Shown here piece by piece: positions 14,957-39,543 of a stretch of 64,000 nucleotides of DNA. The position numbers and the translations under genes were made by a program. The notes beneath the pieces are model-generated. The model saw only the letters and a list, made by a program, of their open reading frames with translations, was not told the origin of the DNA and ran no database searches. The stretch comes from Ostrea edulis (lineage: Eukaryota): the NCBI RefSeq assembly GCF_947568905.1, contig NC_079167.1, positions 5,828,001 to 5,892,000 on the forward strand, read 5' to 3'. Each line of letters starts with the position of its first letter. Within the stretch, counting starts at the first letter, position 1.

Positions 14957-15119
14957 TTAAAAGCCAAATGGTGATCCAACCAAAGCCTCAGCTGCTGGAG
15001 AAGTCCCAAAGATATCTTCGGAGAAATCAAGGGCTTCATCCAGCATATGACCAGTCATCATGGGGGGAATCTTCTTGATGTAGGTGCTCTTCTTGACTCT
15101 TTCAGGATACACCACATTC
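14957..15119 (-). CDS. ODC1: ODC terminal coding exon 10 ([19 protein letters not shown]...VGSPFGF*)
   Basis: ttgacag|G acceptor completes the split Trp codon (TG|G) and the frame is open for 53 codons to TAA. The sequence is poorly conserved, so the call rests on phase and splice signal. Confidence 0.75.
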
Positions 15120-21100: not shown

Positions 21101-24100
21101 AAAGAAAACAAAAAACTAATTTTTGAGAAAGTTAAATGAGTGAAAGCTTTTGATTGTGACGTCACAATAGAATGACGCAAAAACACGTCAAGTGTAAACA
21201 TTTCGTAACGTATTTCAAAACAATGAGGGAGATATCACAAATTGTCTCCCTTCACATGACCAGCCCTCAACCAATGAAATTGACTCTATTATTCTGAAGG
21301 ATATTAATACAAATTAATCACATCTTATAATAATTATTAAGTTGTTAATTAAATCTGCAATATGTACAAACCTTCAGCATTTTTTATTGTGAATGGCAAC
21401 ATCAGCTGCATTGTTTATTTTTATAGACATATTTCAAATATCATTGTTCTGATGACAACCGGTCCATGGTCGAAAATGGTCAACCAAATAAATTTACTCA
21501 TGCATTCTCATGATGTGTTAGTGATCTGTTTATTTCTTGAAAGTTTATAACTTTAGATCCAGACCCTATTGAATTCCACAATTTTAACCTAAGGTGTTGA
21601 TGTCCAGTTTTTATTTTGTTTGAATTAGACAATATCTGAATTCAACAATAAGTATATTGTAGTATCATGGATGTGTCCTATCACATGTATCATACCAGGC
21701 TTCCTGTTTATCATAACATTGCATTTATATTGAAATATATTATTTGATTCAGACAGTAATACAGTATACATGGTTGATACCCTTGAAGAACAGACGTATA
21801 TTTTGTGACAACAAATGATCTCCATATATTCTCTCGTATTTGAATGCTAATGACTGAGGCAATTTGCTTTTGATTATTCAGTGCTTGTTTATGTTCTGTA
21901 TACAGGGAAATATTCACCCCCATTTTATTTTTGTTTCTTTCACTCTCGTTGTCACTGAGCGAATTTAAGAGTGGGCGAAACTGTTTTCTCTTAAATCTCT
22001 CTTTTAACACAACTATGTCTGGGTGAATTTAAAATGGGGCAAAACTGTCTGCAGGTGTAGAAAGGTGAAAATAACACAGGGTGATAATAACCCTGTATAC
22101 AGTATTCTGCATAATATTAGATATCAAAATGATCCGATAGCATATCTATCAACCTATTACATGTAAATTCAATATAAAAACACATGCACTAAGTAGTAAA
22201 TACATGTATATGTATGCAAAACATTTTAAGTTCTTTTTTTAACTTTCAAAACACATGTACATGCAAAATCGAATTTCTGACCAAGTGTTTGTACATGTAT
22301 TTTACACATATAATACATACAATTACAACCCCATTCCACTTCCGTATACTTACTAGACCCTTATAAATATTTCTGTAAAATTTCACAATAATCCGATATA
22401 AAACCCTGTACATCATAATAACAATGTCCACGGTACAGTATGGGAAATAACAAAAATTGATTTCATCCTAAAACATGTGGTATCTTGCACATTTATACAC
22501 TTGATTCTCAACATTTCTGTCAAGGTTTCATTCTAATCCAATTCAAGCTGTATTCAAAAAGCACCCCCATGTATAAAATGTTTAAGTTCACAAACCAGGC
22601 CTTTAAAAATGTATTATCTTTTAAAAATTCTAACAATAGTACACAAGTCTTTTTACACAAACTTTGATAGTGAAAATGGACATACATAAATGTTGTAATG
22701 TCCAACTAATATGTTTGTTTAGGATAGATAGGTTGGATCCCACAATTTTTGCTCTGTAACTTTAATCCCTTAATTGTACAATATGTAATCATGAGAACAT
22801 AGACTCCTATAAATGTCAATGTCCTTGCTTTTATTTAATTACTAGTAAAACATTTTATGTAGTGTAAATGATTAATATATGATTGAATTCATTTTTGGGA
22901 GATAAAATACATCGTATTTCTAAATGCTCATACCTACTTGTAGATTATTTTGTATTACATAATTCTGTAAAGATAAAAAAAACACGCATGCCTGTATAAA
23001 TGCACCCTATCTATATTTGCTTGCATCGTGAAGATTGCTTATCAGGTTTTGTGTGTATCATTAAAACAGCTTTATATCGGGTTTTGTGAGTATCATTAAA
23101 ACAGCTTTATATCAGGTTGTGTGTGTATCATTAAAACAGCTTTATATCAGGTTTTGTGTGTATCATTAAAACAGCTTTATATCGGGTTTGTGTGTATCAT
23201 TAAAACAGTTTTATATCGGGTTTTGTGTGTATCATTAAAACAGCTTTATATCGGGTTTGTGTGTATCATTAAAACAGCTTTATATCGGGTTTGTGTGTGT
23301 ATCATTAAACATTAAAACAGCTTTATATCAGGTTTTGTGAGTATCATTAAAACAGCTTTATATCAGGTTTGTGTGTATCATTAAAACAGCTTTATATCAG
23401 GTTTTGTGTGTATCATTAAAACAGCTTTATATCAGGTTTGTGTGTATCATTAAAACAGCTTTATATCGGGTTTGTGTGTGTATCATTAAACATTAAAACA
23501 GCTATATGTCAGGTTTTGTGAGTATCATTAAAACAGCTTTATATCAGGTTTGTGTGTATCATTAAAACAGCTTTATATCAGGTTTTGTGAGTATCATTAA
23601 AACAGCTTTATATCAGGTTTTGTGAGTATCATTAAAACAGCTTTATATCAGGTTTTGTGTGTATCATTAAAACAGCTTTATATCAGGTTTTGTGAGTATC
23701 ATTAAAACAGCTTTATATCAGGTTTGTGTGTATCATTAAAACAGCTTTATATCAGGTTTGTGTGTATCATTAAAACAGCTTTATATCAGGTTGTGTGTGT
23801 ATCATTAAAACAGCTTTATATCAGGTTTTGTGTTAAAACAGCTTTATATCAGGTTTTGTGAGTATCATTAAAACAGCTTTATATCAGGTTTTGTGTGTAT
23901 CATTAAAACAGCTTTATATCAGGTTTTGTGTGTATCATTAAAACAGCTTTATATCAGGTTTTGTGTGTATCATTAAAACAGCTTTATATCGGGTTTTGTG
24001 TATCATTAAAACAGCTTTATATCGGGTTTTGTGTGTATCATTAAAACAGCTTTATATCAGGTTTGTGTGTATCATTAAAACAGCTTTATATCAGGTTGTG

Positions 24101-27100
24101 TGTGTATCATTAAAACAGCTTTATATCAGGTTTTGTGTGTATCATTAAAACAGCTTTATATCGGGTTTGTGTGTATCATTAAAACAGTTTTATATCGGGT
24201 TTTGTGTGTATCATTAAAACAGCTTTATATCGGGTTTGTGTGTATCATTAAAACAGCTTTATATCGGGTTTGTGTGTGTATCATTAAACATTAAAACAGC
24301 TTTATATCAGGTTTTGTGAGTATCATTAAAACAGCTTTATATCAGGTTTGTGTGTATCATTAAAACAGCTTTATATCAGGTTTTGTGTGTATCATTAAAA
24401 CAGCTTTATATCAGGTTTGTGTGTATCATTAAAACAGCTTTATATCGGGTTTGTGTGTGTATCATTAAACATTAAAACAGCTATATGTCAGGTTTTGTGA
24501 GTATCATTAAAACAGCTTTATATCAGGTTTGTGTGTATCATTAAAACAGCTTTATATCAGGTTTTGTGAGTATCATTAAAACAGCTTTATATCAGGTTTT
24601 GTGAGTATCATTAAAACAGCTTTATATCAGGTTTTGTGTGTATCATTAAAACAGCTTTATATCAGGTTTTGTGAGTATCATTAAAACAGCTTTATATCAG
24701 GTTTGTGTGTATCATTAAAACAGCTTTATATCAGGTTTGTGTGTATCATTAAAACAGCTTTATATCAGGTTGTGTGTGTATCATTAAAACAGCTTTATAT
24801 CAGGTTTTGTGTTAAAACAGCTTTATATCAGGTTTTGTGAGTATCATTAAAACAGCTTTATATCAGGTTTTGTGTGTATCATTAAAACAGCTTTATATCA
24901 GGTTTTGTGTGTATCATTAAAACAGCTTTATATCAGGTTTTGTGTGTATCATTAAAACAGCTTTATATCGGGTTTTGTGTATCATTAAAACAGCTTTATA
25001 TCGGGTTTTGTGTGTATCATTAAAACAGCTTTATATCAGGTTTGTGTGTATCATTAAAACAGCTTTATATCGGGTTTCGTGTGTATCATTAAAACAGCTT
25101 TATATCAGGTTTGTGTGTATCATTAAAACAGCTTTATATCGGGTTTGTGTATGTATCATTAAACATTAAAACAGCTTTATATCAGGTTTTGTGAGTATCA
25201 TTAAAACAGCTTTATATCAGGTTTGTGTGTATCATTAAAACAGCTTTATATCAGGTTTTGTGAGTATCATTAAAACAGCTTTATATCAGGTTTTGTGTGT
25301 ATCATTAAAACAGCTTTATATCAGGTTTGTGTGTATCATTAAAACAGCTTTATATCGGGTTTGTGTGTATCATTAAAACAGCTTTATATCAGGTTTGTGT
25401 GTATCATTAAAACAGCTTTATATCAGGTTTGTGTGTATCATTAAAACAGCTTTATATCAGGTTTTGTGTGTATCATTAAAACAGCTTTATATCAGGTTTG
25501 TGTGTATCATTAAAACAGCTTTATATCAGGTTTGTGTGTATCATTAAAACAGCTTTATATCAGGTTTTGTGTGTATCATTAAAACAGCTTTATATCAGGT
25601 TTCGTGTGTATCATTAAAACAGCTTTATATCAGGTTTCGTGTGTATTGTATTTTGCATTAATCTCATTATATTGTGGATCATGTCAAGAGTATTAGGATA
25701 ACATAAGATTACTGGTAAACAGCCAATTACAACTTTCATTTCTAAAGGTTTTGTTCAGCATATTCTACACATTTGTCCTTAATAGTAGTAATATCCTTTA
25801 TGAAATGTACTATATGAAGTAGGAAGTGTACATAGATGCAAGTAAATGTACGGGTATTATCACTGACAGTGAATTGTAGAGAAAGATCATCCTTTCTATC
25901 AGCTGTTGTTACTACCTGAAGAGTGCTGACTTCCACCTTAGCATGGTCAAACAATAGGCAATTGAAAGAGCCATAGACTCCATCGTTTACATAGTACATC
26001 ATGACGGGTCCTTGGGTGTCCTGGGGGGCATCATCTACAAAGGTCATCTGAATGTCACTATTCCAGATTATCAGTTCATATTCATAATCAGTTGTCTACC
26101 TAGTGAATGGGTCTGTGTCTCACGAGAAAGACATGAACTCCTGCTTTGATGTCTAGATTTACATTTTATCACCAAAGAATATGGTATTCACAAGACCTCT
26201 CTGCTTTTTGTGCTTAATTTTCAGGTCAATATTGTTTCTTAACTCATTACTTGCCCCTTGCTAATTTTTAAAATCTCACCAATGGTCTTTTCATTGGTCA
26301 CCACTCTCTTGGCAATAATGTTGACAGTGAGAGTGAAGGCAGAAGCTACAAAGTATCTCCCAGGTTCAGCAATGATCTCCACTCCGGAAGAAGCTGGGAA
26401 GTGCTGATCTAAGGCCTCATTGATAACACTTGCAATCTGTAAATCAACAACTAATAATTGTAATCAAAGTCTCCCAAATGAACACCAAATAATTCCCTAC
26501 TCCATAGGGAAAATTGCTTTGAAGTCCACTTTCTGCAAAATAAACAAACTGCATACTGTTTACTGTATATACTTGCCTAGAGGTTGGATTTTTGGGAGTT
26601 AAATTTTGGTACAAAACTCTATGTCCGACTTAAAGGAGTGTCCTAAGAAGATAAGTATTTTTCTGGACGGCGTAATGTATAGCCTAGTATTCTTTAAACA
26701 ACAAAAACATGGACAAAATAAACAAAATAGTAACTGTTTAATTTGTTGAGTATGAAAAGTTAAATATCGATGTCATATCCAAAAATATTATTGGAACACA
26801 GGTAAATACAAAATAGTATTGGTATGAAATTGATTTGTTGTGGAAAAAAAGTCAAATATCGACACATTTCTTGAAATATTATTTGAAAAACAGGTAAAAA
26901 CATTAGAGCATCGATTTGAAATTGTCAACCGATTCTTGAAAAAAGTTAGATAAAATTATAAACAGGTAAATGGCAATTCCCTCCAAAATAACCTAAAAAC
27001 TATACAACCGACTTATAATCTAACAGACTTAAAGGCGAGTATATATGGTACACTCCTCTTGCAAAGCCCTGATAGTTTTAAATTCCCCTGAGATCCCTTA

Positions 27101-30100
27101 TAATGAAAGGAAACCCTTTCAGCACAAGTGTAGAATGTGTAACAAAGAAGAAACAAGCTTTAAGTTAAGGGAGACATCAAATTTTACATATCAAACCAAC
27201 TGGAAATTACAAGTTTTAAACACCTATTATAAAATATCAAAGCACTTTCAGAAATTGCTAAAAAAAATTTGGGCAGGGGTTCTCCTATACATTAAAGTTT
27301 TATTCAGAGTTCTGACACATTTTTGGACAGTCATTTTGAAAATGTTGACCATTTTCAAAATTTCGAGTTCACCATTTTATTCACCATCCTCAACTACCAT
27401 TGTTGAGATTGGACAACATTGAAAAATTAACAACTTTTCAGCGGCTATTTCAAGAGCCATCCTCATCTACATGTAAAACTCAATAATACATACTGCACTG
27501 AATGGAATTGGTGAAGACTGTTGGCCTGGAAATCCTCCTCCAATGTCAAGCAAGGTCATGTTGAATCCCATGGCAAGGGCAAGGTCAAAGACAGTACGTG
27601 CCTGTTGTATGGCAACAGCAAAAGCTTCAGCCTCCTCACATCCACTGCCCACATGGAAACTGAAACACCATATTTTGATGTATGAATCTCTGTCAATAGT
27701 ACCAAGTGCAGCAAGCAGCCCAAAGGGATGCTCGCAAAGATAGCTCTAATGGTAACATTTGTATAAGAGATAATTGGTTCAAAATACAAAGTTTGGGCTA
27801 CATCGTTTACCCTCATTTTCTTTAGTTCGAGTCACTTATGGAAGACGTCACCGTAACACATCAGCATAACTCGTACCAAAATTTTTCCATTGACTACCAT
27901 TGAAGAATTTTGCATTTAGACTTTCTTAACACACAGATAACATTATGGAATTACAACTGTTAAATAAATCTAAATATCCAAGTGTATTCAAGCTGCTACA
28001 GACTGTGATGTTAAAACGTGAAATATTCCAGTTATCAACTTTTCATTTCCAGCGTAAAAGCATAAGCACTGTCTACATCAACTATGTAATATTTTCTGTG
28101 TTCAATAAATGGCGCATCAAATGTCTAGTGTTGTGTTGCAAGATGTTTTGACAGCTGTTTGTACACATCCAGATAACTTTGGAATTATCTGATTCTACAT
28201 GCCTATTAAGCATAAACCTATACATGAAAGTATACAATGGCTGTGCTCACACCAATGCACTGTACACATATTAACAAATCCAATTAAAAAATCAATAAAA
28301 ATATAAACAAGCTGGTTGCATACTTTTCCTCAGTGTGTTATTTTACATGCATTATACAACATTGTCTTATGAATGAGACAAAACTGCACTCACCTGACTC
28401 CCATGACATTAAGCTCTAGGTTGCGAGCCACCTCCAGCAAAGACCACGCTTTGTCTGGATGACATCCATATTTGTTCCCTAGCTCGCACTGAACCTTGAA
28501 GTTGGAGGGAGGGAGAATTCGCAGAACCAGCCTAAAGGGTACAAAGAGGAAAGTCTTGATAGAAATCAGATTTTAACCTCTAACCATAGAAAACCTTATA
28601 TTGTGAACCCATGCACAAGTCACACATGGCTGCAGTAAATATCAAATGCATTACCAGCTGTTCTCGAATATTTTACAAACTTATAATTGTACTCTTAATT
28701 ATGGTGTCACTAAAAAAAACAGGTTTAGCTTAATAGTTTGTCTTTAAACTTGCCTAGCCTCTGGGAACCAGGCCTTGACTTTATGGAGCTCATCCTCATT
28801 GTCAAAAGTCATCATGTCCACATGTTTCTTGGCAGCATACTTGATATAAGAATTCTGCTTGCATGGATTGGCATAGATGATTCTGGACGGATCAACTCCC
28901 AAATCCAGAACTTTCATAATTTCCACCTGTACAGATTTCAAGAAATATTCCATTGATGTATATAAAATGTTTAATTTAAAATTATATGCATATGTACAGG
29001 ACATTCATTGTTCGGTATTACGTGTAGTCCAGAGATGAAAATTCGCCAAGTAAGCCCCCAAGTCTAAAATCTTGGATGCCCACATTGAAAACAATTAGTC
29101 ACATCCAAATTGACATTTTAATTCAATTTCACATTTTACATCAATAAAAGAAATATGTTCTGTAAATTAATATAATATCCCCTAGATACCACCAACTTAT
29201 GCTTTGAACTAACCAGTGTACAATAATTATAATGACATTCTGAGCCGTAGACACTTCTCATGCTTCCTATAAATTTAATTTCATGGTTCCGTATATCTAT
29301 CATGTTTAAAAGAAATTTTAAAGTTCAGAAATGTTGTTGAAAGCCAATCTTAAAAGTTTATCTGTTTGTCATAAAATGTACATGTATTTGCAATGAAGAA
29401 ATTCAACAACCAAAAGATAAATAACCCTAATGAAAAACTATTGTCAAAATTTGCACCTTGTTGGATACAGAAGGCGAAGGTTATAATTATCACATGCATA
29501 ATAGTCTAGTCCTAAAGTTCAAAATAGTAAACAGCAGTACCTGATTTACTTCAACTAAATTACCTAGGAACTAAGATGAGGGAAATTTTACGAATGCCAA
29601 GTGGGCGATCAGAATAATTTTTTTTAGGGACACACAGAAATTTTCTCGTCATTTTGGAGAGTGCTTATCTGCATCCCTATAGTCATACTTCAAGTCAAGA
29701 CTAAACCTTAAAGTTATCTTTCTTATCTGTATACAATGAATACCATAACTAAATATAATAAAACAAAAATAATAACAAATTATCAATTACTGACCTTGCT
29801 TGCACAGTCAAAATTAGTGCCCATATCTGCCAACAGCTTCAGTACAGCATAGTCATCATTGCACTTCACAGCTAAAATTACACATTAAATCTAATAATTC
29901 AATACAAAACATCAATTGTTTCACTTTCATGAACAAACATAAAAATTTATACAAGAGGCCCATGAGGCACACTGCTCACATGAATCCCCTTGGCCCTACT
30001 GTAATTCAACTGTTTTCACTTTTTTAAAACAAAATTTTTTAATCTCAATTCCCATGAAAAATTGTCCCCATATAGTGGCCCCAACCTAGCCTCTAAGGGT

Positions 30101-32111
30101 CATGACATAAGTATACTGAACTTAATTCACATAACATAGGGATGCCTCAATACCAATATGAATAACATGACCTTATTTGTTCTAAAGGTCAAGGTCAAAG
30201 AGCATGGTATGAAATGAAAGGTCTTGCCATAAGAAATCTATATGAATCTATGTGAAAGCCCTACCTCAAGTAGTTCAGGAGATATTGAATAGGTAGGTTT
30301 TCTTAAAAAGGTAGATCAAACTTTAAGGTCAAGGTCACAAGGTTAAAAGTTTCCATGTCAATTAATGCACATGTATGAAATATGAGACCCTATTCAAAAA
30401 TTATATGCAAGGTTCAAGTTTCAGTTTTTAAAGATGTTTCTCTATGTATTCCTGTATAAAACTTTGATCCTCTGTTGTTGTCCCATCCTACCCCCCGTGG
30501 GTTATAATTTTAACAAACTTATATCTGCACTGCCTGGGAATGCTTGCATATCAATGAGTATTCACAGTCCTGCTGTTAACTGAGAAGATTTTTAAAGATT
30601 TTACCTATATATTCCCATATAAAATTTTAATCCCCTAATGTGGCCCCACCCTGGGAAAAGAATATGAACATATTTGAACCTGCACTATCTGGGGATGCTT
30701 GCATATTAATATGAGTATTCATGGCCATGTTGTTTTTATGGAGGTATACTACATGACTCCACCCTATTTTTGCCTTTTCTTGATTATCTTCCCTTTGGAT
30801 GGAGTATGGCCATTCATTTGAACACACTTTAATCACCTTTACCAAAGGATGATTTGTGTCAAATTTGATTGAAACTGGTTCTGCGGTTCTTGAGAAGATT
30901 TCAAAAGATACCACAAAATTTTCACTACATCGCTTCAAAAATGGCATGGCACTTCGTTTGAACAAACTTGAATCCACTTTACCCAAGCAAGTTTGGCTGA
31001 AATTAGCCCTGTGGTTCTGGAGAAAAAGTCTAACATGTTTTAATCTCAAAGGTGGACAGACAGACAGACAGACAGAATGTGATCAGGAAAGCTCACTTGA
31101 GCTCTCAGAAAGCTGCAAAAACTTATATTAAATGCATTAAGAATTCCAATACAGGTGAAATTCCAGGCTGATGGTATGAGATATTTCTTACCATAAAAGG
31201 GCATGACCCTTGGCAGTGTCTGTTTCCAAACTTGGTACTTAGTGACAATATCCCCGAGGTCACCAATAAAGAATGCATCCTCCTTTTGCTGAAAATAAAC
31301 AAAGGACTAAATACAAATGTAGACGTGTTATCTCTAGTAATAATATGGCTTTAAAACTAAGAATGAGATAGAAACATATACTTTATATATAACATACTAA
31401 TACTATCAATTCATTAATTCACAATATTACCTAACCTACAATATAAGTTGTAATTAACCATTTCCAACAGTTTCCCTAGTTAACAGTCAACCTGCTTACC
31501 AGTCATAGCAATATCTTGTCCACCAGTAGGCATAAATTTCATTTATTTTTTTTTTAGAAAAATATGAAAATTTTACTTTCTGGTACTTTTTTTTTCATCG
31601 GTAAAATGTATTTCCATTTTACAACAAAATGAAATATGTGCAAAATGATGTTGATAACTTGATATTGCTACAAAATTAGATAAAGAGAAATACTGATTAT
31701 TTGCAAGTTTCTGTTACTATTAATGAATTAAAGAATTTACAATGTAGGTTAGGTAATAAAACATTTATTACATGGATTCTTGGGCAACAGTTTTCCAAAG
31801 TCTTTTCCCCTCCCTAGGGACAACAGTTGAAAGTAGCCATGCAAAAATATATATTCCTTCTATAAGAACATGTAAGAGTTCTAATACTGTGTTCATGCCC
31901 TTACACAAGCCATGGTTAGATGTTAAAAATCTATCCCATCATGAACCTCTCGCTAACTGAAGTATCATGTTAATCTACAGTGTTTAAAAGAAAACAAAGT
32001 TAGGGTTACCTCTTGGTCATGGAGGTCAGCTTTCTCCTCTACAAGGCTCTTGATGGTTCGTTCATAGTTGATAATTTGAACAGTAGAGTTGTTTCCAATA
32101 TATTTCTTCAT
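14957..32111 (-). CDS. ODC1: Ornithine decarboxylase (PLP-dependent, fold type III), 10 coding exons, 1404 nt, 467 aa
   Basis: Hand-spliced exons (minus): 32111-32010, 31288-31192, 29871-29795, 28926-28754, 28531-28394, 27659-27494, 26436-26280, 26034-25916, 20314-20103, 15119-14957. Phases are compatible, and all introns are GT-AG except one GC-AG. Motifs: PFYAVKCN (PLP lysine), [67 protein letters not shown] (catalytic Cys), MGAYT, STFNG. Confidence 0.97.
15186..15932. mobile_element. hAT-like non-autonomous element in the last ODC intron
   Basis: Perfect 14-bp TIR cagagttcttgaaa / tttcaagaactctg; no clean TSD. Confidence 0.6.
16007..17324 (+). mobile_element. Helentron-associated (pearl/HINE-type) element
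   Basis: Starts aacaagaggcccacaggcc..tcacctgag, has satellite-like core repeats, and ends ggtcacctgagtgactcgggtgaactaaa. Confidence 0.75.
16249..16698. mobile_element. hAT-type MITE nested in the HINE
   Basis: TIR tagtgatg/catcacta; flanks aacatcgt / aacatcca (6 of 8 TSD match). Confidence 0.7.
18861..19731. mobile_element. hAT-like element carrying an inverted Cg170-like fragment (about 19370-19625)
   Basis: TIR cagtgattccgaaggtc / gaccttgggaagcactg; caacag direct repeat on both flanks. Confidence 0.6.
20103..20314 (-). CDS. ODC1: ODC coding exon 9 ([13 protein letters not shown]...[14 protein letters not shown]...)
   Basis: Catalytic GPTCDGLD; taatag| and TG|gtaagt. Confidence 0.97.
20783..20891. 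mobile_element. Near-palindromic fold-back mini-element (about 110 bp)
   Basis: Arms atggactgtttagcagggaga..cacaaataatcag / ctgataatttgtga..tctccctgctaaacagtccat. Confidence 0.7.
23037..25646. repeat. 34/35-bp minisatellite, about 75 copies, with a 979-bp higher-order duplication
   Basis: Unit gtgtatcattaaaacagctttatatcaggttt(t)gt; rare variants recur at a 979-bp offset. Confidence 0.95.
25916..26034 (-). CDS. ODC1: ODC coding exon 8 ([31 protein letters not shown]...)
   Basis: [13 protein letters not shown]; ttgtag| and CAG|gtagta. Confidence 0.96.
26280..26436 (-). CDS. ODC1: ODC coding exon 7 ([14 protein letters not shown]...[15 protein letters not shown]...)
   Basis: AEPGRY motif; ttacag| and G|gtgaga. 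Confidence 0.97.
27494..27659 (-). CDS. ODC1: ODC coding exon 6 (FHVGSGC...[10 protein letters not shown]...PFSA)
   Basis: FHVGSG and DIGGGFPG; tttcag| and GCA|gtatgt. Confidence 0.97.
28394..28531 (-). CDS. ODC1: ODC coding exon 5 ([23 protein letters not shown]...VMGV)
   Basis: LVLRI, KYG and GVS motifs; ctttag| and AG|gtgagt. Confidence 0.93.
28754..28926 (-). CDS. ODC1: ODC coding exon 4 ([23 protein letters not shown]...FPEA)
   Basis: IIYANPCKQ and MMTFD motifs; donor is AG|gcaagt (GC-AG intron). Confidence 0.95.
29795..29871 (-). CDS. ODC1: ODC coding exon 3 ([26 protein letters not shown])
   Basis: PLP-binding AVKCN and FDCASK; ttttag| and AAG|gtcagt splice sites. Confidence 0.97.
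29951..31108 (+). mobile_element. HINE/pearl element with Cg170-like cores and an (ACAG)n tract, between ODC coding exons 2 and 3
   Basis: acaagaggcccatgagg..., gacagacagacagacag, gatcaggaaagctcacttgagct end. Confidence 0.8.
31192..31288 (-). CDS. ODC1: ODC coding exon 2 ([15 protein letters not shown]...LPRVMPFY)
   Basis: ttttcag| acceptor, G|gtaaga donor, matches the DAFYVADLGD..LPRVTPFY region of ODC. Confidence 0.95.
32010..32111 (-). CDS. ODC1: ODC coding exon 1 ([34 protein letters not shown])
   Basis: ATG in aaaATGa context, 34 codons, donor GAG|gtaacc. Acceptor ttttag| puts the exon start at 32139, giving 28 nt of 5' UTR. Confidence 0.85.
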
Positions 32112-33092
32112 TTTGATTATCAAAAGTTATACAAACAATCTAAAATGGAAAGAATTTTACTTCTGTCAACTTCTTACAGCCTCTCTTTAACATCATAAAT
32201 GCCAATTCTAAATCCATATCTGATATTCCAAAAATTAGATTAAACTCTGTCAAAGACTGTTGCCTGTTAATGGTGTTGTAGTGGATATTATACAAATAAT
32301 CAGAAAGACAAAGAGATCTATGTAACAAGTGGTGATTGGTGTATTAAATAATGCTGGTACGTAAATTGTATTATTAGTGGCTAATACCTATAAAACTGTC
32401 AATCTGTTAAGTTTAACACAATAAAACAACAAACACATGTGGGAACTCATTCAATGAAGTGAGCAGCACATACTTCTTTTGGCTCTGTTAGGCCAAAAAT
32501 AAAGGGTACAGATTGAAAATAAATGGTGACAATAGATGCTCTTGAAAAAGTAGATTTCCTTGGCATTGAAAGGCAAGTAAGAATAAAATTACTTCATAAA
32601 ATTCTGGGCATCACCATGTGATATTTGTTCAGGCTAGTAGAATTAGTGTATATACCTGCAGTGATTTTTTTTTTTTTGGTTGTTGTTGTTCAAACTACCA
32701 CCCCTCCTTTTGAATTGCGAAAAATTAGCGACATTTTCCTCAAATTGGGAAAAATCATTCATAGTATATTAAAATGGTAAAGATGCATAAAATAGGGCTG
32801 TGCGGTGCACCAAAACTGTCGGTGCACCACAATTCATACCATTCGATTCACTGATTACAAATTCTGGATTTCAGTTCAGTTTAGGTTTTACATACACCAA
32901 AACAACAAATATGGCGTCCGAGTGATGTGCAGAACATGCGAGTTTTTATGCATCAGAGATTTAAATCACTACTGTGTTGAAATTTAGCATTTTCACCACT
33001 CAGATACCAACAGAATATGGTCCATAAGATCATTACAGTTTATCTTTACATGTCATGTTGCATTTCTATTAGTGCTGGAGTGAAATCAACAG

Positions 33093-33354
33093 CGTAGATG
33101 ATGACAAGCTAATATATACGTAGATGATGACAAGCTAATATATACGTAGATGATGACAAGCTAATATATACGTAGATGATGACAAGCTAATATATACGTA
33201 GATGATGACAAGCTAATATATACGTAGATGATGACAAGCTAATATATACGTAGATGATGACAAGCTAATATATACGTAGATGATGACAAGCTAATATATA
33301 CGTAGATGATGACAAGCTAATATATACGTAGATGATGACAAGCTAATATATACG
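33093..33354. repeat. 26-bp minisatellite, 10 perfect copies
   Basis: Unit cgtagatgatgacaagctaatatata. Confidence 0.95.
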
Positions 33355-33489
33355 AGAAGTAACTCAATAAAGGAGAGATTTTCAAAGACTCTCAATTCAT
33401 AGAATTTTGACATGTAAATGAGAACAATATCATATACATTTTAGATTGACAATATATTTGTTTAATAATCCAAAAAATTATGCTGCACA

Positions 33490-33527
33490 TTAATATATCA
33501 AAGCTCTATCACTTATTGTTCAAAAGC

Positions 33528-33582
<55 letters not shown>

Positions 33583-33618
33583 GGGGTCAAAAATGTTGGT
33601 ACCCACGGAAAGGTCTTG

Positions 33619-33650
<32 letters not shown>

Positions 33651-33660
33651 CCTATCACTT

Positions 33661-33697
<37 letters not shown>

Positions 33698-33755
33698 CAG
33701 AATTACAGAATGACAGACAGGACAAAAACAATCTTCGATCTTGGGGGCATAAAAA
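33490..33755 (+). mobile_element. Short HINE-type element
   Basis: caaggtcaaggtcacggggtcaaaaatgttggtacc core, gacagacag tract, gggggcataaaaa end. Confidence 0.65.
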
Positions 33756-35166
33756 TGTATTTACTCTTTGTCAGCAATATATGGTAACTTTTTGTTTAAA
33801 ATGGCCTAATTTTTCTAGATTTGAAATTGGGAAAAACATACATATAATTGGCAACAAATAGCTAATTTTTGTGAGGGGAAACAGCCAAATATCAGTGGCA
33901 TCTTGGTCCCCCAAAAAATCACAGACCTGCCTGAAGGGCATGCAGTGAAAAAATAAATCTGGCTAAGACTGTATTGATCACCTAGTGATTGAGTAATGAT
34001 TTGTTTTTGAATAGATGTTACTATTGGCACACTTCATCGAGCAGATGATACATAATTGGCATGTGTATCATTACAGTATCTAAGCAAGTTGGTATTGCAG
34101 ATAAAAGACATTGTTTATACTTGGTATATGCATGATATGCATAATTAAGAGATCTTAAACAACAAATATTAATCCACACGAAATAATATTCACTACGAAA
34201 ACAACAAATTTTTTCCCAACGAAATTAAATATGTCTACAGTTTTCATTTTCTTTATCATTCTCTGAAGAAAAACCCTAAGAAATTCTATTAAAAGACTTT
34301 TGTCAATCTCATGACCACGTTCAGTAAGCAACTTCCGAGATATCAGCTCTTCTGTGATGGAGGTACGTTCAGTATTCTGTTGAACACTTGGGTGAGTACA
34401 AGATGTATACATATATTATAGACTAGCTATGTAAATAAGGATAAAAGTTGTGAAAGCGTAAATTTTATTTATATCAGCCGTTGGTATACATTAGACTGAC
34501 CATATCAAGAATAATATTTGTTTGAATAAGGCCATTAAATTAAATATGAAATAATTTTTGATTTCCTTTTCTGCATGAGTGATACTTTAATCAAAGAAAG
34601 ATGGTGATTATCGATTTTTGTTTGAGCTATTCCATTATCAGATACTCATAAACTTACTAAAATTATGTGTCCTAGTAGTTTGGGTGGTTGCTTGATGTCT
34701 GATAATCATCCTTTAGGAAATATATGAAGGCAGCGATAAGCATTTGTACCCACTGCATGTGGACGAAAGTATGTTTTGCATCTCACTATGCGTAAGAGTT
34801 CCACAAAGAGAAAGAACTATTGGGCAACTCGGAAATTGCATATTCAGACCCAGTCTCTTATCAAATTATCCACCTGTTCACTAGTCAGGGAACATGGATT
34901 CTTTACTTGAAGATCCCTCTTTAGTTTTGAAATATAAAAATAAAGACTTCTTGTTTTTACCATGTTTACTATCATCTAATCTAACTTTAAGATGATAGTA
35001 TTTTTAGTTCACCTTATATGCTACATTTTTTGTCACATTGACAGATTTAAAGAATACTGATCCCGAGCTTAAATGCAATAAAATTGTTAACAAAAATCAA
35101 ACAGTGACTTAGAATAGTTTTGTTTTTTATCATCCTTTAAGAATTTTTAAATATTATTTTCAGCAT

Positions 35167-35815
35167 TGCAGGGTTTGACATTTACTTTTTTGAGCACTAG
35201 ACCAGTCGGGTTACTTCAAATGATTTTTACTAGACACACATTTTCTGTTTCTTCAAATTCTACCCGGCACGAAAATTATTTAGTCCATTTAGAATAAAAT
35301 AACCTCAACCGGTTTTTTAAATTTCTATTTCATAAGCCCTGCTTTGTTTCTTCTCGACCTTTTCCCTTTTATTTCTCTTGGGACATCTTTCCTTGAGGAC
35401 GAAAAGTCGTATTAGAATATAAATGGAGACATTCCTGCACACATGTCAACACCAAAAAACACTTTCTAATACACGTATTTAATTCAAATAAACTGTTTTT
35501 TTAAAAATGAAAATGATTTCAATTTATATCTATTTATCGGAAACATAACTTTACACACATCATCGAGTAGATGTCCTAAAACATCACTTCCGAATGCGAC
35601 TTATTCATTAGAACTAAAAATAGAGAGTATGTCATCACGCGATTCAAATTTGCTCGAAAACTCTTTACAGTTATTTTTCAGTTAAGAGTAAAATATCTTG
35701 TGATTTAAAGTAAAGTTTCTTGTTTATTTTTTCAACACGACCAATCGGACTACCAAATCAACATTTTACCCGACTGGACCCACCATTTAGTAGACTCGGT
35801 CGGTCAAACCCTGCA
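35167..35815. mobile_element. MITE with a perfect 13-bp TIR
   Basis: tgcagggtttgac / gtcaaaccctgca. Confidence 0.65.
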
Positions 35816-36079
35816 TTCGGAATGGGGCCCTAAATTCAACGTTTAAAAACCCCTGATCTGTCCATTATAGCAGATGAAATGTTTATGACAATGAAAATGT
35901 TCAGTTCCGAAATTCAGTAATATCTGGATTTAAAATCTGCTGGACATTTATTTGGACCGATAAAATCTAAATTCTATCGGTCATGTTAAGAATTTGTTGG
36001 GGATGCACTATGGACAAACACATTCCGAGAACTCTGTTAATTATACCTGGCCAGAGGAAACACCTGCACTCAACCGATA

Positions 36080-36181
36080 CTAGCTGGGATCCCACGGTGG
36101 TTCTGCGTTGAAGTCAAACTTCTGCGTAAGTCTGCAGAAGCCCTCGGGGAACTCGATGTAGATCCTCAAGGATAAACAACC
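36080..36181 (-). CDS. uCC upstream ORF of ODC, exon 2 part (GCLSLRIYIEFPEGFCRLTQKFDFNAEPPWDPS*)
   Basis: Acceptor tattcag|GGT; ends FDFNAEPPWDPS-TAG, nearly identical to the conserved uCC C-terminus (FDFNAEPPWEPS, recalled). The exon continues as UTR to a candidate donor CAG|gtataa at 36047. Confidence 0.92.
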   Translation of the reverse strand, partial: GCLSLRIYIEFPEGFCRLTQKFDFNAEPPWDPS

Positions 36182-36409
36182 CTGAATATACCAGAAAACA
36201 AATACCTTAAATACAAGAAGTAGTATATATTGGGTTATCTATCAAATATTAATTGCTGATGCAGTTATGAATCAGATGTTTAATTATTGACTAACTGTGT
36301 GACTGTCTTCAAAGGTGTATTAAAATCTCCCCACCAAGTTTTTCCATTTGCATTATCATTGACGAAATCTTTAGATAAACTAATAAAAGTGGGCACACAT
36401 TGTTTTGGG

Positions 36410-38292
36410 CAGGGTTGGCAAAAAAGTGGTCAATATGAGTATTGACCGGGCCGGTGGTCAATACTGGTTAAAACCGGCCAATACTGGTTGATTGAAAATT
36501 GTTTGGTCATTATAGTCTGTGTTGGTTATTTTAAATGTTTCAGTGGCCAATATGGTAAATACCGTAATTCATAACATGCACTATCAGTTTATAATATACT
36601 TGCAAGTCATAATATTAAATAAATAATGTAAATGACTCAATTAAATAGGGGAAGATGTAAAATTTTATTGTAAAAATTAAAAACTGTTTCGTAGCCGTAT
36701 TACTTTGGCACTGACAACAGCATTGCAGTCTTTACATCTTGCTGTGGTCTTGTTGTTGTCCTCAACAATATCATAGAAATTCCAAAATGTTTTGTTGAAG
36801 CCATAGATAGTATGATGGGGGAAGTGTTTTCTATTTCTGTTCAAATTCTTTAGTTTATCAAGAACTACCTATTGTTTCAAATCTTCATTTAACTGTTAAA
36901 TAAACATTTTAGGGGGTGTGTTGGTGATGTTTTCATAACAATAACATGTACACTGGTCCTCTCTGGTCCCAGAGTATGCTAATTAACACCTGTCAACTGT
37001 TTCCTGTGCTCAGGTACATCTCCTGCTCTGTACATTCCAACACATTGTTTATCTACAGCATCTGTCACCCAATTCATATTAAATCACTGTGTTTATTTAA
37101 TGTCCAGCTACTTGTTATTCTTAATCTGTCCAGGTACATGTATAAGCAGATCCTATTGTCCAGTTATGCTATATGTAACCCTCTTTTATAGTTCTGAAGA
37201 TATTATGGTCACAGTTTCAGCAAACCAAATATATTAAACTTATGAAATTACATCTAATTATTTGATGAAAATTATTGATAACCAATTGATCCATATATCA
37301 TAATGAAAAGGCTTAATTTATCCACAGGAGTTTGAAATTTTATCAATAAAGTCAATAAAATTCACTTGATTGACCAAGCCATGAGCTATGCGTTAGCATA
37401 GCGAACAGGAATGAAACGCCGTTTTGGACAAATCTCGAGTTTCGCTTTGAACCGCCGCGCAATGAATATAACTCGTAAGTATTTATCACTAACAACATTT
37501 GCCTACTTAAATTTGCCTCCTAGCCCCTCTCTAATGCTGTCAGTATCCACTTTATTCGATTCTGTGTAAACATTGACTTTACCGAGGACCCATTGTAATA
37601 CGTCACATTCACTCCGGGCCTGACATTTTAGTATTCCTTATAATTTAAAGTTAAAAAAAATAAAATAAAATGCTATTAATCCTTCCACATATTTTTTAAT
37701 CAAATGAAATAAATTACAACATATAAAATCATCAGTCATATCAATTATCATATTTTGAGGCCAGAAACTATGTTCAGAGTTTAAAAACAAAGGGCGATAA
37801 TTGTGTAGAAAGTTGCATGTGCGGGAAATCATTGGATTACAAAAATGTCAGGCCCGGAGTGAATGTGACATATTACAATGGGTCCTCGGTAAAGTCAATC
37901 TTTACACGGAATCGAATAAAGTGGATACTGACAGCATTAGAGAGGGGCTAGGAGGCAAATTTAAGTAGGCAAATGTTGTTAGTGATAAATACTTACGAGT
38001 TATATTCATTGCGCGGCGGTTCAAAGCGAAACTCGAGATTTGTCCAAAACGGCGTTTCATTCCTGTTCGCTATGCTAACGCATAGCTCATGGCTTGGTCA
38101 ATCAAGTGAATTTTATTGACTTTATTGATAAAATTTCAAACTCCTGTGATTTATCTTTGCAAAAAATATACAAAAATAGGAAAATGGACAGTTTAAATCT
38201 CATTTGACCAGCATTGACCACTTAGGGAGTATTGACCGGGACGGTTAAAACCGCGGGTTAAAACCGGGGGCGGTTTTAACCGCCCAACCCTG
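36410..38292 (-). mobile_element. hAT deletion derivative with a perfect 8-bp TSD and a BED-finger remnant
   Basis: TIR cagggttggc / gcccaaccctg; TSD gttttggg at 36402-36409 and 38293-38300; minus strand about 36686-36815 reads FWNFYDIVEDNNKTTARCKDCNAVVSAKVIRLRN. Confidence 0.85.
37323..38148. mobile_element. Long-TIR MITE (about 310-bp near-perfect arms) nested in the hAT element
   Basis: Arms 37323-37634 and 37838-38148; CAC..GTG termini; atttatc direct repeat on both sides (7 bp, compatible with a P-superfamily TSD). Confidence 0.85.
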
Positions 38293-39097
38293 GTTTTGGG
38301 TATTTAAAACCATTGAATATACTTGTTTGTAACAGTAATTTGTTAAGATTAACTTTCTCTAACTCCAATTTAAGGTCGTGCTTATGTTGCAACATTTATA
38401 TCTATTGCAAATAAAATTATCAGTGAGCAAATTCCACATTGATACACCTATACATAGGGATGACGACATTTTTAAATCACAAAGTTCAAGGTTGTCACCA
38501 CGTGAAAATCACATGGTTTTTTTAAACAAAAGATATTTGTATGATTAGCTGCTTTTAAAAAAATTCAAAAGTGGTCCTTTTTCAAAGAAACGTTAAAGTG
38601 ATAATGTAACTTTCAAACTCCTGTGATTTATCTTTGCAAAAAATATACAAAAATAGGAAAATGGACAGTTTAAATCTCATTTGACCAGCATTGACCAGTA
38701 TTGACCACTTAGGGAGTATTGACCGGGACGGTTAAAACCGCGGGTTAAAACCGGGGGCGGTTTTAACCGCCCAACCCTGGTTTTGGGTATTTAAAACCAT
38801 TGAATATACTTGTTTGTAACAGTAATTTGTTAAGATTAACTTTCTCTAACTCCAATTTAAGGTCGTGCTTATGTTGCAACATTTATATCTATTGCAAATA
38901 AAATTATCAGTGAGCAAATTCCACATTGATACACCTATACATAGGGATGACGACATTTTTAAATCACAAAGTTCAAGGTTGTCACCACGTGAAAATCACA
39001 TGGTTTTTTTAAACAAAAGATATTTGTATGATTAGCTGCTTTTAAAAAAATTCAAAAGTGGTCCTTTTTCAAAGAAACGTTAATGTGATAATGTAAC
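38134..39097. repeat. Recent tandem duplication, 477 + 487 bp
   Basis: 38134-38610 and 38611-39097 differ by one 10-bp indel and about one substitution. Confidence 0.92.
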
Positions 39098-39191
39098 TCA
39101 AGATCTTGTTACTATATGCCATGAAATAGGAACTTCCAAGCGAGTCCCAAACAAGGCATGGTGACGGACAAAATATTCCATTTCAACTCAC

Positions 39192-39242
39192 CAATACAGA
39201 AACCTCGGGAACGCTAGTATCCTTCTTCTCTTTGGTCGGAAT
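39192..39242 (-). CDS. uCC upstream ORF of ODC, exon 1 part (AUU start; IPTKEKKDTSVPEVSVL)
   Basis: acaaaATTCCGACCAAA context resembles the AAAAUUCCG start of the AZIN1 uCC (recalled). 17 codons end at a strong donor TTG|gtgagt, in phase 0 with the 36181 exon. Confidence 0.85.
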
Positions 39243-39543
39243 TTTGTCCGATTTATATGGACAAGTATGATAATAAAATACCCCCTAAATAACAAATATA
39301 TCCCCCTGAAATAAAATATCACTGTTCAATGCTCATCCACACAGCGGAAGTTTAGTAAAAGAAAGAAACAAGGAGCGAGGACTTGTAAACCCGGATAAAT
39401 AATGTCGGTAGCAGGTCGTTCCGTCCCCCAGTCGGTCCGTCCCTAGTCTATCCGTCCCATGGTCGATTCGGCCCAATTTGCTTAGTCGATCCGGCCCCTC
39501 CATTTTTTTTAAATCAAAGATATAATAAATGATTATTACTTAA

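What the first reader, a model, noticed from the sequence alone, without database searches (positions are those of the whole stretch)
36080..39242. Hidden spliced, AUU-initiated polyamine-sensor uORF (uCC, PPW stall motif) in the ODC 5' leader
Seen: on the minus strand, acaaa-ATT-CCG at 39242 opens 17 codons to a GTGAGT donor (39192). It splices in phase 0 to cag|GGT at 36181 and gives a 50-aa peptide, IPTKEKKDTSVPEVSVLGCLSLRIYIEFPEGFCRLTQKFDFNAEPPWDPS*. The predicted leader has no AUG from about 39305 through to the ODC ATG. The uORF stops 61 nt before that ATG if 36047 splices to 32139. The ORF track misses it because of the non-AUG start and the 3-kb TE-filled intron. Known: the AZIN1/ODC-family uCC starts at AUU in an AAAAUUCCG context and ends ..PEG..FDFNAEPPWEPS (recalled). 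High polyamines inhibit eIF5A, ribosomes stall at PPW, queue, raise AUU initiation and repress the main ORF. Inference: this is an intact translational feedback sensor for polyamine synthesis in a bivalve, likely missed by automated annotation. The mechanism is known in other taxa, so it is not new in principle.
Basis: partly seen in the sequence, partly recalled or inferred. Interest (0 to 1): 0.9.

Follow-up and report, generated by a model that had tools for sequence, protein, structure and literature searches.

The report
Oyster ODC polyamine-sensing upstream ORF
The leader of this oyster's ornithine decarboxylase gene carries a spliced 50-codon upstream reading frame that starts at AUU. 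It is a clear orthologue of the known polyamine-sensing "uCC" of vertebrate antizyme inhibitor, so it is real and well preserved but an expected member of a described class.

Summary
**Observation: confirmed to the base.**
- On the minus strand, ATT at 39242 opens 17 codons up to a GT donor.
- It joins in phase 0 at 36181 and runs 33 more codons, ending ...FDFNAEPPWDPS-TAG at 36080.
- The frame stops 61 nt before the ATG (32111) of an intact 467-aa ODC.

**Splicing.** RNA contigs of two closely related oysters, plus a full mRNA contig of a third source (L001), show both junctions: 39192^36181 and 36047^32139.

**Membership in the uCC family.**
- Searches found 60+ peptides ending [FL][DN]FNAEPPW[DE]PS-stop. 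Every one I traced that has a downstream gene in reach lies upstream of an ODC or AZIN1 ORF, in molluscs, another invertebrate and fish.
- The start context AAAAUU[C/A]CG is conserved, and so is the length of 47-50 codons.
- No near-cognate codon lies between the upstream in-frame stop and the AUU.
- The 305-nt leader has no AUG, against about 5 expected (P~0.001).
- The ten C-terminal residues (FNAEPPW[DE]PS) never change apart from D/E, while their codons vary synonymously.

**Function.** Polyamine-dependent stalling at PPW, ribosome queuing and raised AUU use are inferred from vertebrate AZIN1 work, not tested here.

**Verdict.** This is a new member of a known kind (Ivanov 2008 reported uCCs in ODC homologues of six animal phyla), so interest is low.

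**One oddity.** Between oysters, the synonymous sites of the uCC and the 33 nt after its stop are far more conserved than those of the ODC coding sequence.

The parts
39192..39310 (-). Leader exon 1 of the ODC mRNA. The 5' end is not mapped; RNA contigs reach at least 39310. A 5-codon AUG mini-ORF at 39336-39319 would be included only if transcription starts further upstream.
   Evidence: Run X2 has depth about 1000-2300 over 39250-39449, and a contig covers 39310.
39240..39242 (-). Putative AUU start codon of the uCC, in the context gacAAAAUUCCG (A at -3).
   Evidence: It is the first near-cognate codon after the in-frame stop TAG at 39287. The same AAAAUU[C/A]CG context occurs in an oyster mRNA, another invertebrate, Elysia and a fish AZIN1 mRNA.
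39192..39242 (-). uCC codons 1-17 (IPTKEKKDTSVPEVSVL), followed by a GT donor at 39191.
   Evidence: The joint to 36181 is seen in an RNA contig of run X2, and the homologous join is present in L001.
36182..39191 (-). Intron 1, 3010 nt, GT..AG, filled with repeats (315-nt inverted repeat, 487-nt tandem duplication).
   Evidence: One search reports a joint that skips 3010 nt, with CT..AC on the + strand. One search reports the repeats.
36083..36181 (-). uCC codons 18-50 (GCLSLRIYIEFPEGFCRLTQKFDFNAEPPWDPS). The last 12 codons are the conserved core.
36092..36100 (-). Pro-Pro-Trp codons (CCA CCG TGG). In AZIN1 this is the polyamine-dependent pause site.
   Evidence: for the sequence. The role is taken from the literature (PMC9082881; PMC8705083).
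36080..36082 (-). uCC stop codon TAG.
   Evidence: A stop (TAG or TGA) stands at the same place in all 8 loci.
36047..36079 (-). 33-nt post-stop part of leader exon 2. It is identical in the related oyster, and GCAGGTGTT and GGCCAG|GT are shared with distant invertebrates.
32140..36046 (-). Intron 2, GT..AG.
   Evidence: Loose ends at 36047 in RNA runs X2 and X7 read on into the start of exon 3. L001 joins these exons.
32010..32139 (-). Exon 3: 28 nt of leader, then the ODC start codon (32111-32109) and the first 34 codons.
14957..32111 (-). ODC coding region of 467 aa in 10 coding exons: 32111-32010, 31288-31192, 29871-29795, 28926-28754, 28531-28394, 27659-27494, 26436-26280, 26034-25916, 20314-20103, 15119-14957. 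One intron has a GC donor.
   Evidence: The protein is 88% identical to Saccostrea echinata ODC-like (P0071).

Best explanation
This is the oyster orthologue of the animal "upstream conserved coding region" (uCC) found in mRNAs of ODC-family genes.

Shown here:
- The ODC mRNA has two short leader exons that together encode a 50-codon frame.
- The frame has no AUG and begins at an AUU in an A-rich context.
- It ends ...FDFNAEPPWDPS-stop, 61 nt before the ODC AUG.

Inferred from work on mouse and human AZIN1:
1. Most scanning ribosomes pass the weak AUU and translate ODC.
2. The few that start at AUU pause at Pro-Pro-Trp when polyamines are high, because polyamines interfere with eIF5A, which is needed to get through that motif.
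3. Following ribosomes queue behind the paused one.
4. A scanning ribosome is thereby held near the AUU, more ribosomes initiate there, and fewer reach the ODC AUG.

The net effect would be negative feedback of polyamines on the translation of their own rate-limiting biosynthetic enzyme.
For: **Anatomy.** Exact coordinates, phase-0 splice and the 61-nt spacer all hold.

**Splicing.**
- RNA run X2 has a contig joining 36181 to 39192 across a GT..AG intron. It also has a loose end at 36047 that reads into exon 3.
- RNA run X7 has loose ends at 36182 (the end of exon 1) and at 36047 (exon 3 through the ATG).
- mRNA contig L001 of a related oyster maps colinearly to exon 1, exon 2, exon 3 and all ODC coding exons.

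**Host gene.** It is an intact ODC with its catalytic motifs.

**Family membership.**
- phmmer and a profile search found 60+ peptides ending [FL][DN]FNAEPPW[DE]PS.
- Five of the seven traced loci lie upstream of ODC or AZIN1: L001, L002, L004, L006 and L007. L003 (a short fish contig) and L005 show no such gene in the stretch fetched.
- BLASTP against the fish AZIN1 uCC gives E = 3e-10.

**Start codon.**
- The AAAAUU[C/A]CG context is conserved from oyster to fish.
- No near-cognate codon lies between the upstream in-frame stop and the AUU.
- The leader has 0 ATG in 305 nt, P ~0.001.

**Peptide-level constraint.** In the ten residues FNAEPPW[DE]PS the amino acids are fixed apart from D/E, while 8 of the 10 codons and the stop vary synonymously across 8 loci.

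**Length.** The uCC is 47-50 codons in every spliced example despite divergent N-terminal halves.

**Mechanism.** It is taken from PMC2811004, PMC4458265, PMC9082881 and PMC8705083.
Against: - No translation or polyamine-response data exist for this animal. Initiation at AUU is inferred.
- The RNA runs with junction evidence are labelled organisms A and C. The DNA runs that match the window perfectly are labelled organism D. Splicing is therefore shown in very close relatives, not strictly in the sequenced individual's species.
- The 5' end of the mRNA is unmapped. A 5-codon AUG mini-ORF at 39336 could belong to the leader.
- Between this oyster and L001, the uCC has 10 non-synonymous and 2 synonymous differences (pN 0.084, pS 0.065). 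At short range there is no signature of peptide selection, only strong nucleotide conservation.
- Run X2 carries E to K in the PEG motif (36145).
Confidence: 0.85

Rival explanations
1. The leader is conserved mainly as RNA rather than as a peptide sensor. It could hold splicing enhancers for two tiny exons set in long repeat-rich introns, a structure, or a protein-binding site. On this view the open frame in oysters is only a passenger of that constraint.
For: - Between the window and L001, synonymous sites of the uCC differ at 2 of 31, against 133 of 281 in the ODC coding sequence (Fisher p = 4e-6). Non-synonymous sites are no slower than in ODC.
- The 33 nt after the stop are identical, and partly conserved in distant invertebrates.
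- The window's spliced leader folds with z = -3.3.
Against: - Across molluscs, another invertebrate and fish, the C-terminal amino acids never change while their third codon positions do, and the stop codon position is fixed. RNA-only constraint does not predict this.
- The predicted fold is not shared with L001 (z = -1.5, a different structure).
- RNA-level constraint can co-exist with the peptide sensor rather than replace it.
Confidence: 0.06
2. The uCC is translated, but not from the AUU at 39242. Initiation would occur at another near-cognate codon inside the frame, for example UUG at codon 17 or 22, or ACG at codon 36. The 17 exon-1 codons would then not be part of the peptide.
For: - Several in-frame near-cognate codons exist inside the frame.
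- The N-terminal half is poorly conserved in sequence.
Against: - The AAAAUU[C/A]CG context is conserved in frame from oyster to fish, whereas the internal near-cognates are not.
- Total length from AUU to stop is held at 47-50 codons.
- In mouse AZIN1 the AUU was verified as the start, and changing AUU to UUU abolished control (PMC2811004, PMC4458265).
Confidence: 0.05
3. The frame is a conserved relic that is no longer used for polyamine control in oysters. ODC would then be regulated only by antizyme and transcription.
For: No functional data exist for any mollusc. At short range pN is not below pS.
Against: All defining features are intact: start context, length, PPW-[DE]PS-stop, an AUG-free leader and splice structure. 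They are also intact in several other molluscs. A relic would decay.
Confidence: 0.04

Closest known systems
uCC of vertebrate antizyme inhibitor 1 (AZIN1) mRNA (Ivanov, Loughran and Atkins 2008; Ivanov et al. 2018)
   Same: - About 50 codons with no in-frame AUG.
- AUU start in an AAAAUUCCG context.
- C-terminus FDFNAEPPW[DE]PS-stop.
- Split by a phase-0 intron before a Gly codon, with an exon junction about 33 nt after the stop.
- Located in the leader of an ODC-family gene.

These points were compared directly with the fish AZIN1 mRNA L007 and the fish genomic locus L003.
   Different: - The host gene is the catalytic ODC itself, not its inactive paralogue.
- The middle of the peptide differs: IEFPEGFCRLTQK here, against VYNNYPEDLGAALYRE in L007 (other fish have PEGLG).
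- The spacer to the main AUG is 61 nt here and 140 nt in L007.
- Function has been tested only in mammals.
uCCs of invertebrate ODC homologues (reported for animals of six phyla in Ivanov 2008, as summarised in PMC2811004)
   Same: Same element in the same gene. Gastropod examples retrieved here (Biomphalaria P0060, Elysia P0061 / L006) share AAAAUUACG, a length of 47-49 codons and the ending FNAEPPWDPS.
   Different: This is a different species, an ostreid oyster. I could not read the 2008 paper, so I cannot say whether bivalves or this species were in its data set.
Fungal ODC uCCs and the plant AdoMetDC short uORF
   Same: They are polyamine-pathway leaders with non-AUG or short uORFs. Their peptides end with Pro-rich C-termini: adjacent prolines in the fungal uCCs and a terminal Pro-Ser in plants.
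   Different: PMC2811004 judges the fungal uCCs to be of independent origin, and no sequence similarity to either group was found in my searches. Lengths are 22-100 codons.
Antizyme +1 frameshift site
   Same: It is the other translational polyamine sensor of the same feedback circuit.
   Different: It is a different gene and mechanism: frameshifting at a stop codon rather than start-site selection by queuing. It is not in this window.

Membership tests
Animal ODC/AZIN1 uCC | Lies in the 5' leader of an ODC-family mRNA, upstream of and separate from the main ORF. | tested here: met
   Both junctions have RNA support. The stop is 61 nt before the ODC ATG. The downstream gene is ODC.
Animal ODC/AZIN1 uCC | Frame of about 50 codons with no in-frame AUG. 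| tested here: met
   The frame has 50 codons and the whole 305-nt leader has no ATG. Relatives have 47-50 codons.
Animal ODC/AZIN1 uCC | Conserved in-frame AUU near the 5' end, in a favourable context (A at -3). | tested here: met
   The context is gacAAAAUUCCG, and AAAAUU[C/A]CG recurs in L001, L004, L006 and L007. It is the first near-cognate codon after the in-frame stop.
Animal ODC/AZIN1 uCC | Conserved C-terminus with adjacent prolines, ending Pro-Ser-stop (..FNAEPPW[DE]PS*). | tested here: met
   The window has FDFNAEPPWDPS-TAG. NAEPPW is kept, and almost all end [DE]PS, in the 66 uCC-type sequences retrieved.
Animal ODC/AZIN1 uCC | Constraint acts on the encoded peptide: synonymous variation with fixed amino acids. 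| tested here: met
   Across 8 loci, 8 of the 10 codons of FNAEPPW[DE]PS and the stop vary only synonymously or D/E. Caveat: the oyster-oyster comparison alone gives pN/pS of about 1.3 with very low pS.
Animal ODC/AZIN1 uCC | Translation starts at the AUU. | not testable with these tools
   This needs initiation-site profiling or reporters. It has been verified only for mammalian AZIN1.
Animal ODC/AZIN1 uCC | Polyamine-dependent, eIF5A-sensitive pause at PPW that represses the main ORF. | not testable with these tools
   Literature only.
Eukaryotic ornithine decarboxylase (catalytic, not antizyme inhibitor) | Orn_Arg_deC_N and Orn_DAP_Arg_deC domains in an intact ORF. | tested here: met
   Pfam hits on the exons. 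The 467-aa model has no internal stop.
Eukaryotic ornithine decarboxylase (catalytic, not antizyme inhibitor) | PLP-lysine motif (AVKCN), catalytic Cys-Asp (GPTCDGLD), GGGFPG, EPGR, and a better match to ODC than to AZIN1. | tested here: met
   The motifs are present. The exon carrying GPTCDGLD aligns to mouse and human ODC. The close homologue P0071 scores 475 bits to ODC against 338 to AZIN1. The residue roles come from my knowledge of ODC structures.

The most novel reading that the evidence does not exclude
The sensor may have a second layer that works at the nucleotide level.

Observations:
- Between two oysters, synonymous sites of the uCC evolve about 7 times more slowly than those of the ODC coding sequence.
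- The 33 nt after the stop are identical between these oysters and partly conserved across distant invertebrates.
- The exon junction sits about 33 nt after the uCC stop in every genomic locus examined, from molluscs to fish.

Interpretation: an exon-junction complex is deposited about 20-24 nt upstream of a junction (my knowledge). It would therefore lie just ahead of a ribosome paused at PPW or at the stop. The fixed junction or the conserved post-stop sequence might take part in stalling, in ribosome release, or in coupling the uCC to mRNA decay.
Probability: 0.2. Interest if true: 0.5.

Novelty: new member of a known kind. Interest (0 to 1): 0.25.

Why it matters
- It documents, with splice evidence, that a bivalve ODC gene keeps the complete AUU-started PPW uORF. 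Translational sensing of polyamines by this uORF therefore probably predates the split of protostomes and deuterostomes, and acts on ODC itself in animals that lack an AZIN1 paralogue.
- It gives annotators a recipe: a two-exon, non-AUG uORF with a phase-0 intron and a junction about 33 nt after the stop.
- It also exposes database errors. The 89-aa Biomphalaria "ODC-like" protein and many vertebrate "hypothetical proteins" are really uCC translations with spurious N-termini.
- It does not change what is understood about the mechanism.

Tried and rejected
- **The look-up of sequencing runs** was busy twice and answered on the third try.
- **Primary papers not held.** Ivanov 2008 PNAS (PMC2481320) and Ivanov 2018 Mol Cell (PMC5916843) could not be read. 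What they showed is cited second-hand from reviews.
- **Whether Mollusca is among the "six phyla"** could not be checked. Paper searches for uCC plus mollusc, oyster or invertebrate found nothing specific.
- **Unrelated hits.** P0002 and P0003 from the representative search are repetitive proteins matched through multiple low-complexity stretches, and were dropped.
- **Pairwise dN/dS (window against L001)** was meant as the test of coding constraint, but gave no peptide signal (pN/pS about 1.3, only 12 differences). The deep codon comparison was used instead.
- **RNA structure.** The window's leader is more stable than shuffles (z -3.3), but L001's is not (z -1.5) and the folds differ. No structure is claimed.
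- **Missing AUU exons.** For L002 the AUU exon was not within the 5 kb fetched. For L005 neither an AUU exon nor ODC exons lay within 10 kb.
- **Exon models.** My first automatic ODC exon model failed and the second inserted 9 spurious residues. Reading the sequence showed a GC-AG intron, which fixed the model.
Full report
**1. The observation**

I read the three stretches on the minus strand and rebuilt the spliced frame by script.
- ATT at 39242-39240 follows gacaaa.
- Seventeen codons end at 39192, directly before GTGAGT.
- The acceptor ttcag|GGT opens exon 2 at 36181.
- Thirty-three codons later comes TAG at 36082-36080. The exon continues for 33 nt to 36047, where GTATAA follows.
- The acceptor ttttag|ATT at 32139 opens the exon that holds ATG at 32111.

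The spliced leader has no ATG from 39335 down to the ODC start. The next ATG upstream (39336) would open a 5-codon mini-ORF if it is transcribed at all. A 305-nt leader of this composition should hold about five ATGs; zero occurred in 0.14% of dinucleotide shuffles.

**2. The host gene**

- Exon translations hit Pfam Orn_Arg_deC_N and Orn_DAP_Arg_deC.
- Guided by a related mRNA and protein, I assembled a 10-exon, 467-aa ORF without internal stops, spanning 32111 to 14957. One intron has a GC donor.
- The protein keeps [40 protein letters not shown] and MGAYT.
- It is 88% identical to the ODC-like protein of Saccostrea echinata. That homologue scores 475 bits to human ODC and 338 to antizyme inhibitor.
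- The window therefore comes from an oyster-family bivalve, and the gene is the catalytic ODC.

**3. Splicing**

I gave read laying 6,000 letters (33450-39449), as the operators' note requires. The tool did not turn any of the stretch away as human-like.
- **Runs X22 and X19 (organism D)** are DNA. Their contigs cross exon-intron borders without a single difference, so they are the window's own species.
- **Run X2 (organism A, RNA)** has a contig of depth 1550 that skips 3010 nt between 36181 and 39192, with CT..AC on the plus strand, which is GT..AG on the gene's strand. Only 24 nt lie on its shorter side. It also has a loose end at 36047 whose letters are the first 12 bases of exon 3.
- **Run X7 (organism C, RNA)** has a loose end at 36182 that reads the last 20 bases of exon 1 with one synonymous change. 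A loose end at 36047 reads 30 bases of exon 3, including the ATG.
- **L001, an independent source.** The peptide search led to a 2.6-kb Logan contig of run SRR18748343. It maps colinearly onto exon 1, exon 2, exon 3 and all ODC coding exons of the window at 82-94% identity. It contains AAAATTCCG, a 50-codon frame, TAG, 58 nt and then the ODC ATG.

Both junctions are therefore real in closely related oysters. Strictly, RNA of organism D itself was not examined.

**4. What the frame is**

- **First search.** phmmer of the exon-2 peptide against 1.84 billion representatives returned three uCC-like peptides (P0001, P0004, P0005; best E = 1.7e-9) and two unrelated repetitive proteins.
- **Profile search.** A profile of these peptides returned 66 uCC-type proteins. 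All keep NAEPPW and almost all end [FL][DN]FNAEPPW[DE]PS.
- **Named hits.** They include an 89-aa "ornithine decarboxylase-like" entry of Biomphalaria glabrata, a hypothetical protein of Elysia marginata, and hypothetical proteins of many fishes, rodents, a bird and reptiles.
- **Genomic context.** I traced seven to DNA.
  - L001: oyster mRNA, with ODC 58 nt downstream.
  - L002 and L004: an unidentified invertebrate about 60% identical in ODC, with ODC exons downstream.
  - L006: Elysia, with an ODC gene next door.
  - L007: a fish mRNA whose main ORF is AZIN1 (553 bits against 400 for ODC).
  - L003: a short fish genomic contig with no ODC-family gene in the stretch fetched.
  - L005: no ODC within 10 kb.
  
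- **Direct comparison.** BLASTP of the window's exon-2 peptide against the fish AZIN1 uCC gives E = 3e-10.

**5. Start codon**

- In the frame of the uCC, the nearest upstream stop is TAG at 39287. None of the 14 codons between it and the ATT is a near-cognate start.
- The same context recurs in frame: ggcAAAATTCCG (L001), ggcAAAATTACG (L004), gcaAAAATTACG (Elysia) and ttaAAAATTCCG (fish AZIN1).
- From AUU to stop, all spliced examples have 47-50 codons, although their first halves are hardly alignable.
- According to the literature, the AUU of mammalian AZIN1 was verified as the start, and changing it to UUU abolished polyamine control.

**6. Coding constraint**

- Across eight loci, the ten residues FNAEPPW[DE]PS never change apart from D/E. 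Eight of their ten codons, and the stop, do vary: GCA/GCC/GCG/GCT, GAA/GAG, CCA/CCG, CCC/CCG/CCT, AGC/AGT, TAG/TGA. This is the signature of selection on the peptide.
- The close comparison (window against L001) looks different. It has 10 non-synonymous and 2 synonymous changes (pN 0.084, pS 0.065), whereas the ODC coding sequence has pS 0.47 and pN 0.051.
- Synonymous sites of the uCC are thus about 7 times more conserved than those of ODC (Fisher p = 4e-6). The 33 nt after the stop are identical.
- Part of that post-stop stretch (GCAGGTGTT ... GGCCAG|GT) recurs in L002, L004, L005 and Elysia. The exon junction lies about 33 nt after the stop even in fish.
- I cannot explain this second constraint. 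Splicing enhancers for small exons in large introns are the dull option. A role of the junction or the post-stop sequence in stalling or decay is the interesting one. Predicted RNA folds are not shared between the two oysters.

**7. Mechanism**

Steps shown here:
- the spliced AUG-free leader;
- the AUU-to-PPW-PS-stop frame;
- its orthology to the AZIN1 uCC.

Steps inferred from mammalian work, as summarised in PMC2811004, PMC4458265, PMC9082881 and PMC8705083:
- leaky scanning past the AUU;
- a polyamine-dependent pause at PPW, because polyamines compete with eIF5A;
- ribosome queuing that raises AUU initiation;
- resulting repression of the main ORF.

**8. Novelty**

The review of Ivanov, Atkins and Michael states that uCCs occur in ODC homologues of animals, that in six animal phyla they end Pro-Ser, and that most appear to start at AUU. 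This locus is therefore another member of that class, in a species for which it has probably not been written down.

Noticed in passing
window 36047-36181 and 39192-39242, compared with L001:1040-1225: Between two oysters, synonymous sites of the uCC differ at 2 of 31, against 133 of 281 in the ODC coding sequence (p = 4e-6). The 33 nt after the uCC stop are identical. This is nucleotide-level constraint of unknown cause.
   Followed up: partly
window 36047-36079; L002:5298-5330; L004:10268-10300; L005:10259-10291; L006:12786-12819; L003:424-456: The exon junction lies about 33 nt after the uCC stop in every genomic locus examined, from molluscs to fish. Invertebrates also share GCAGGTGTT and GGCCAG|GT in that stretch.
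   Followed up: partly
window 28752-28753 (minus strand): The ODC intron after exon 28926-28754 has a GC donor (AG|GCAAGT). A GT-only gene model inserts 9 spurious residues here.
   Followed up: yes
window 39319-39336 (minus strand): There is a five-codon AUG mini-ORF (ATG AGC ATT GAA CAG TGA) 94 nt upstream of the AUU. Whether it is part of the mRNA depends on the unmapped transcription start.
   Followed up: no
window 36145: RNA run X2 (organism A) reads T for C on the plus strand. This changes Glu30 of the uCC (the E of PEG) to Lys.
   Followed up: no
window 37323-38148 and 38131-38990: Intron 1 holds a 315-nt inverted repeat (98% complementary, 196-nt spacer) and a 487-nt tandem duplication. 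DNA-run word depth shows that most of the intron is high-copy repeat.
   Followed up: partly
window about 23100-25620 (plus-strand ORFs): The large ODC intron between exons 25916 and 20314 contains a long tandem array. Near-identical ORFs ([20 protein letters not shown]...) recur about every 979 nt, with shorter internal periods.
   Followed up: no
P0060, P0061, P0016, P0038 and other named hits: Public databases list uCC translations as proteins. Examples are the Biomphalaria glabrata "ornithine decarboxylase-like" entry of 89 aa, an Elysia marginata hypothetical protein, and many vertebrate hypothetical proteins. They carry spurious AUG-started N-termini read from leader or intron sequence.
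   Followed up: partly
L002:5247-5249: In this unidentified invertebrate the uCC has an in-frame ATG 15 codons before its stop (..LQHMKQKFNFNAEPPWDPS). This is an exception to the no-AUG rule. Upstream of its exon 2 lie several tandem copies of the acceptor region.
   Followed up: no
L001:1-1030: The oyster mRNA contig carries about 1 kb of AT-rich sequence with many ATGs upstream of the AUU. This sequence does not match the window. It is probably unspliced or genomic carry-over rather than true leader.
   Followed up: no
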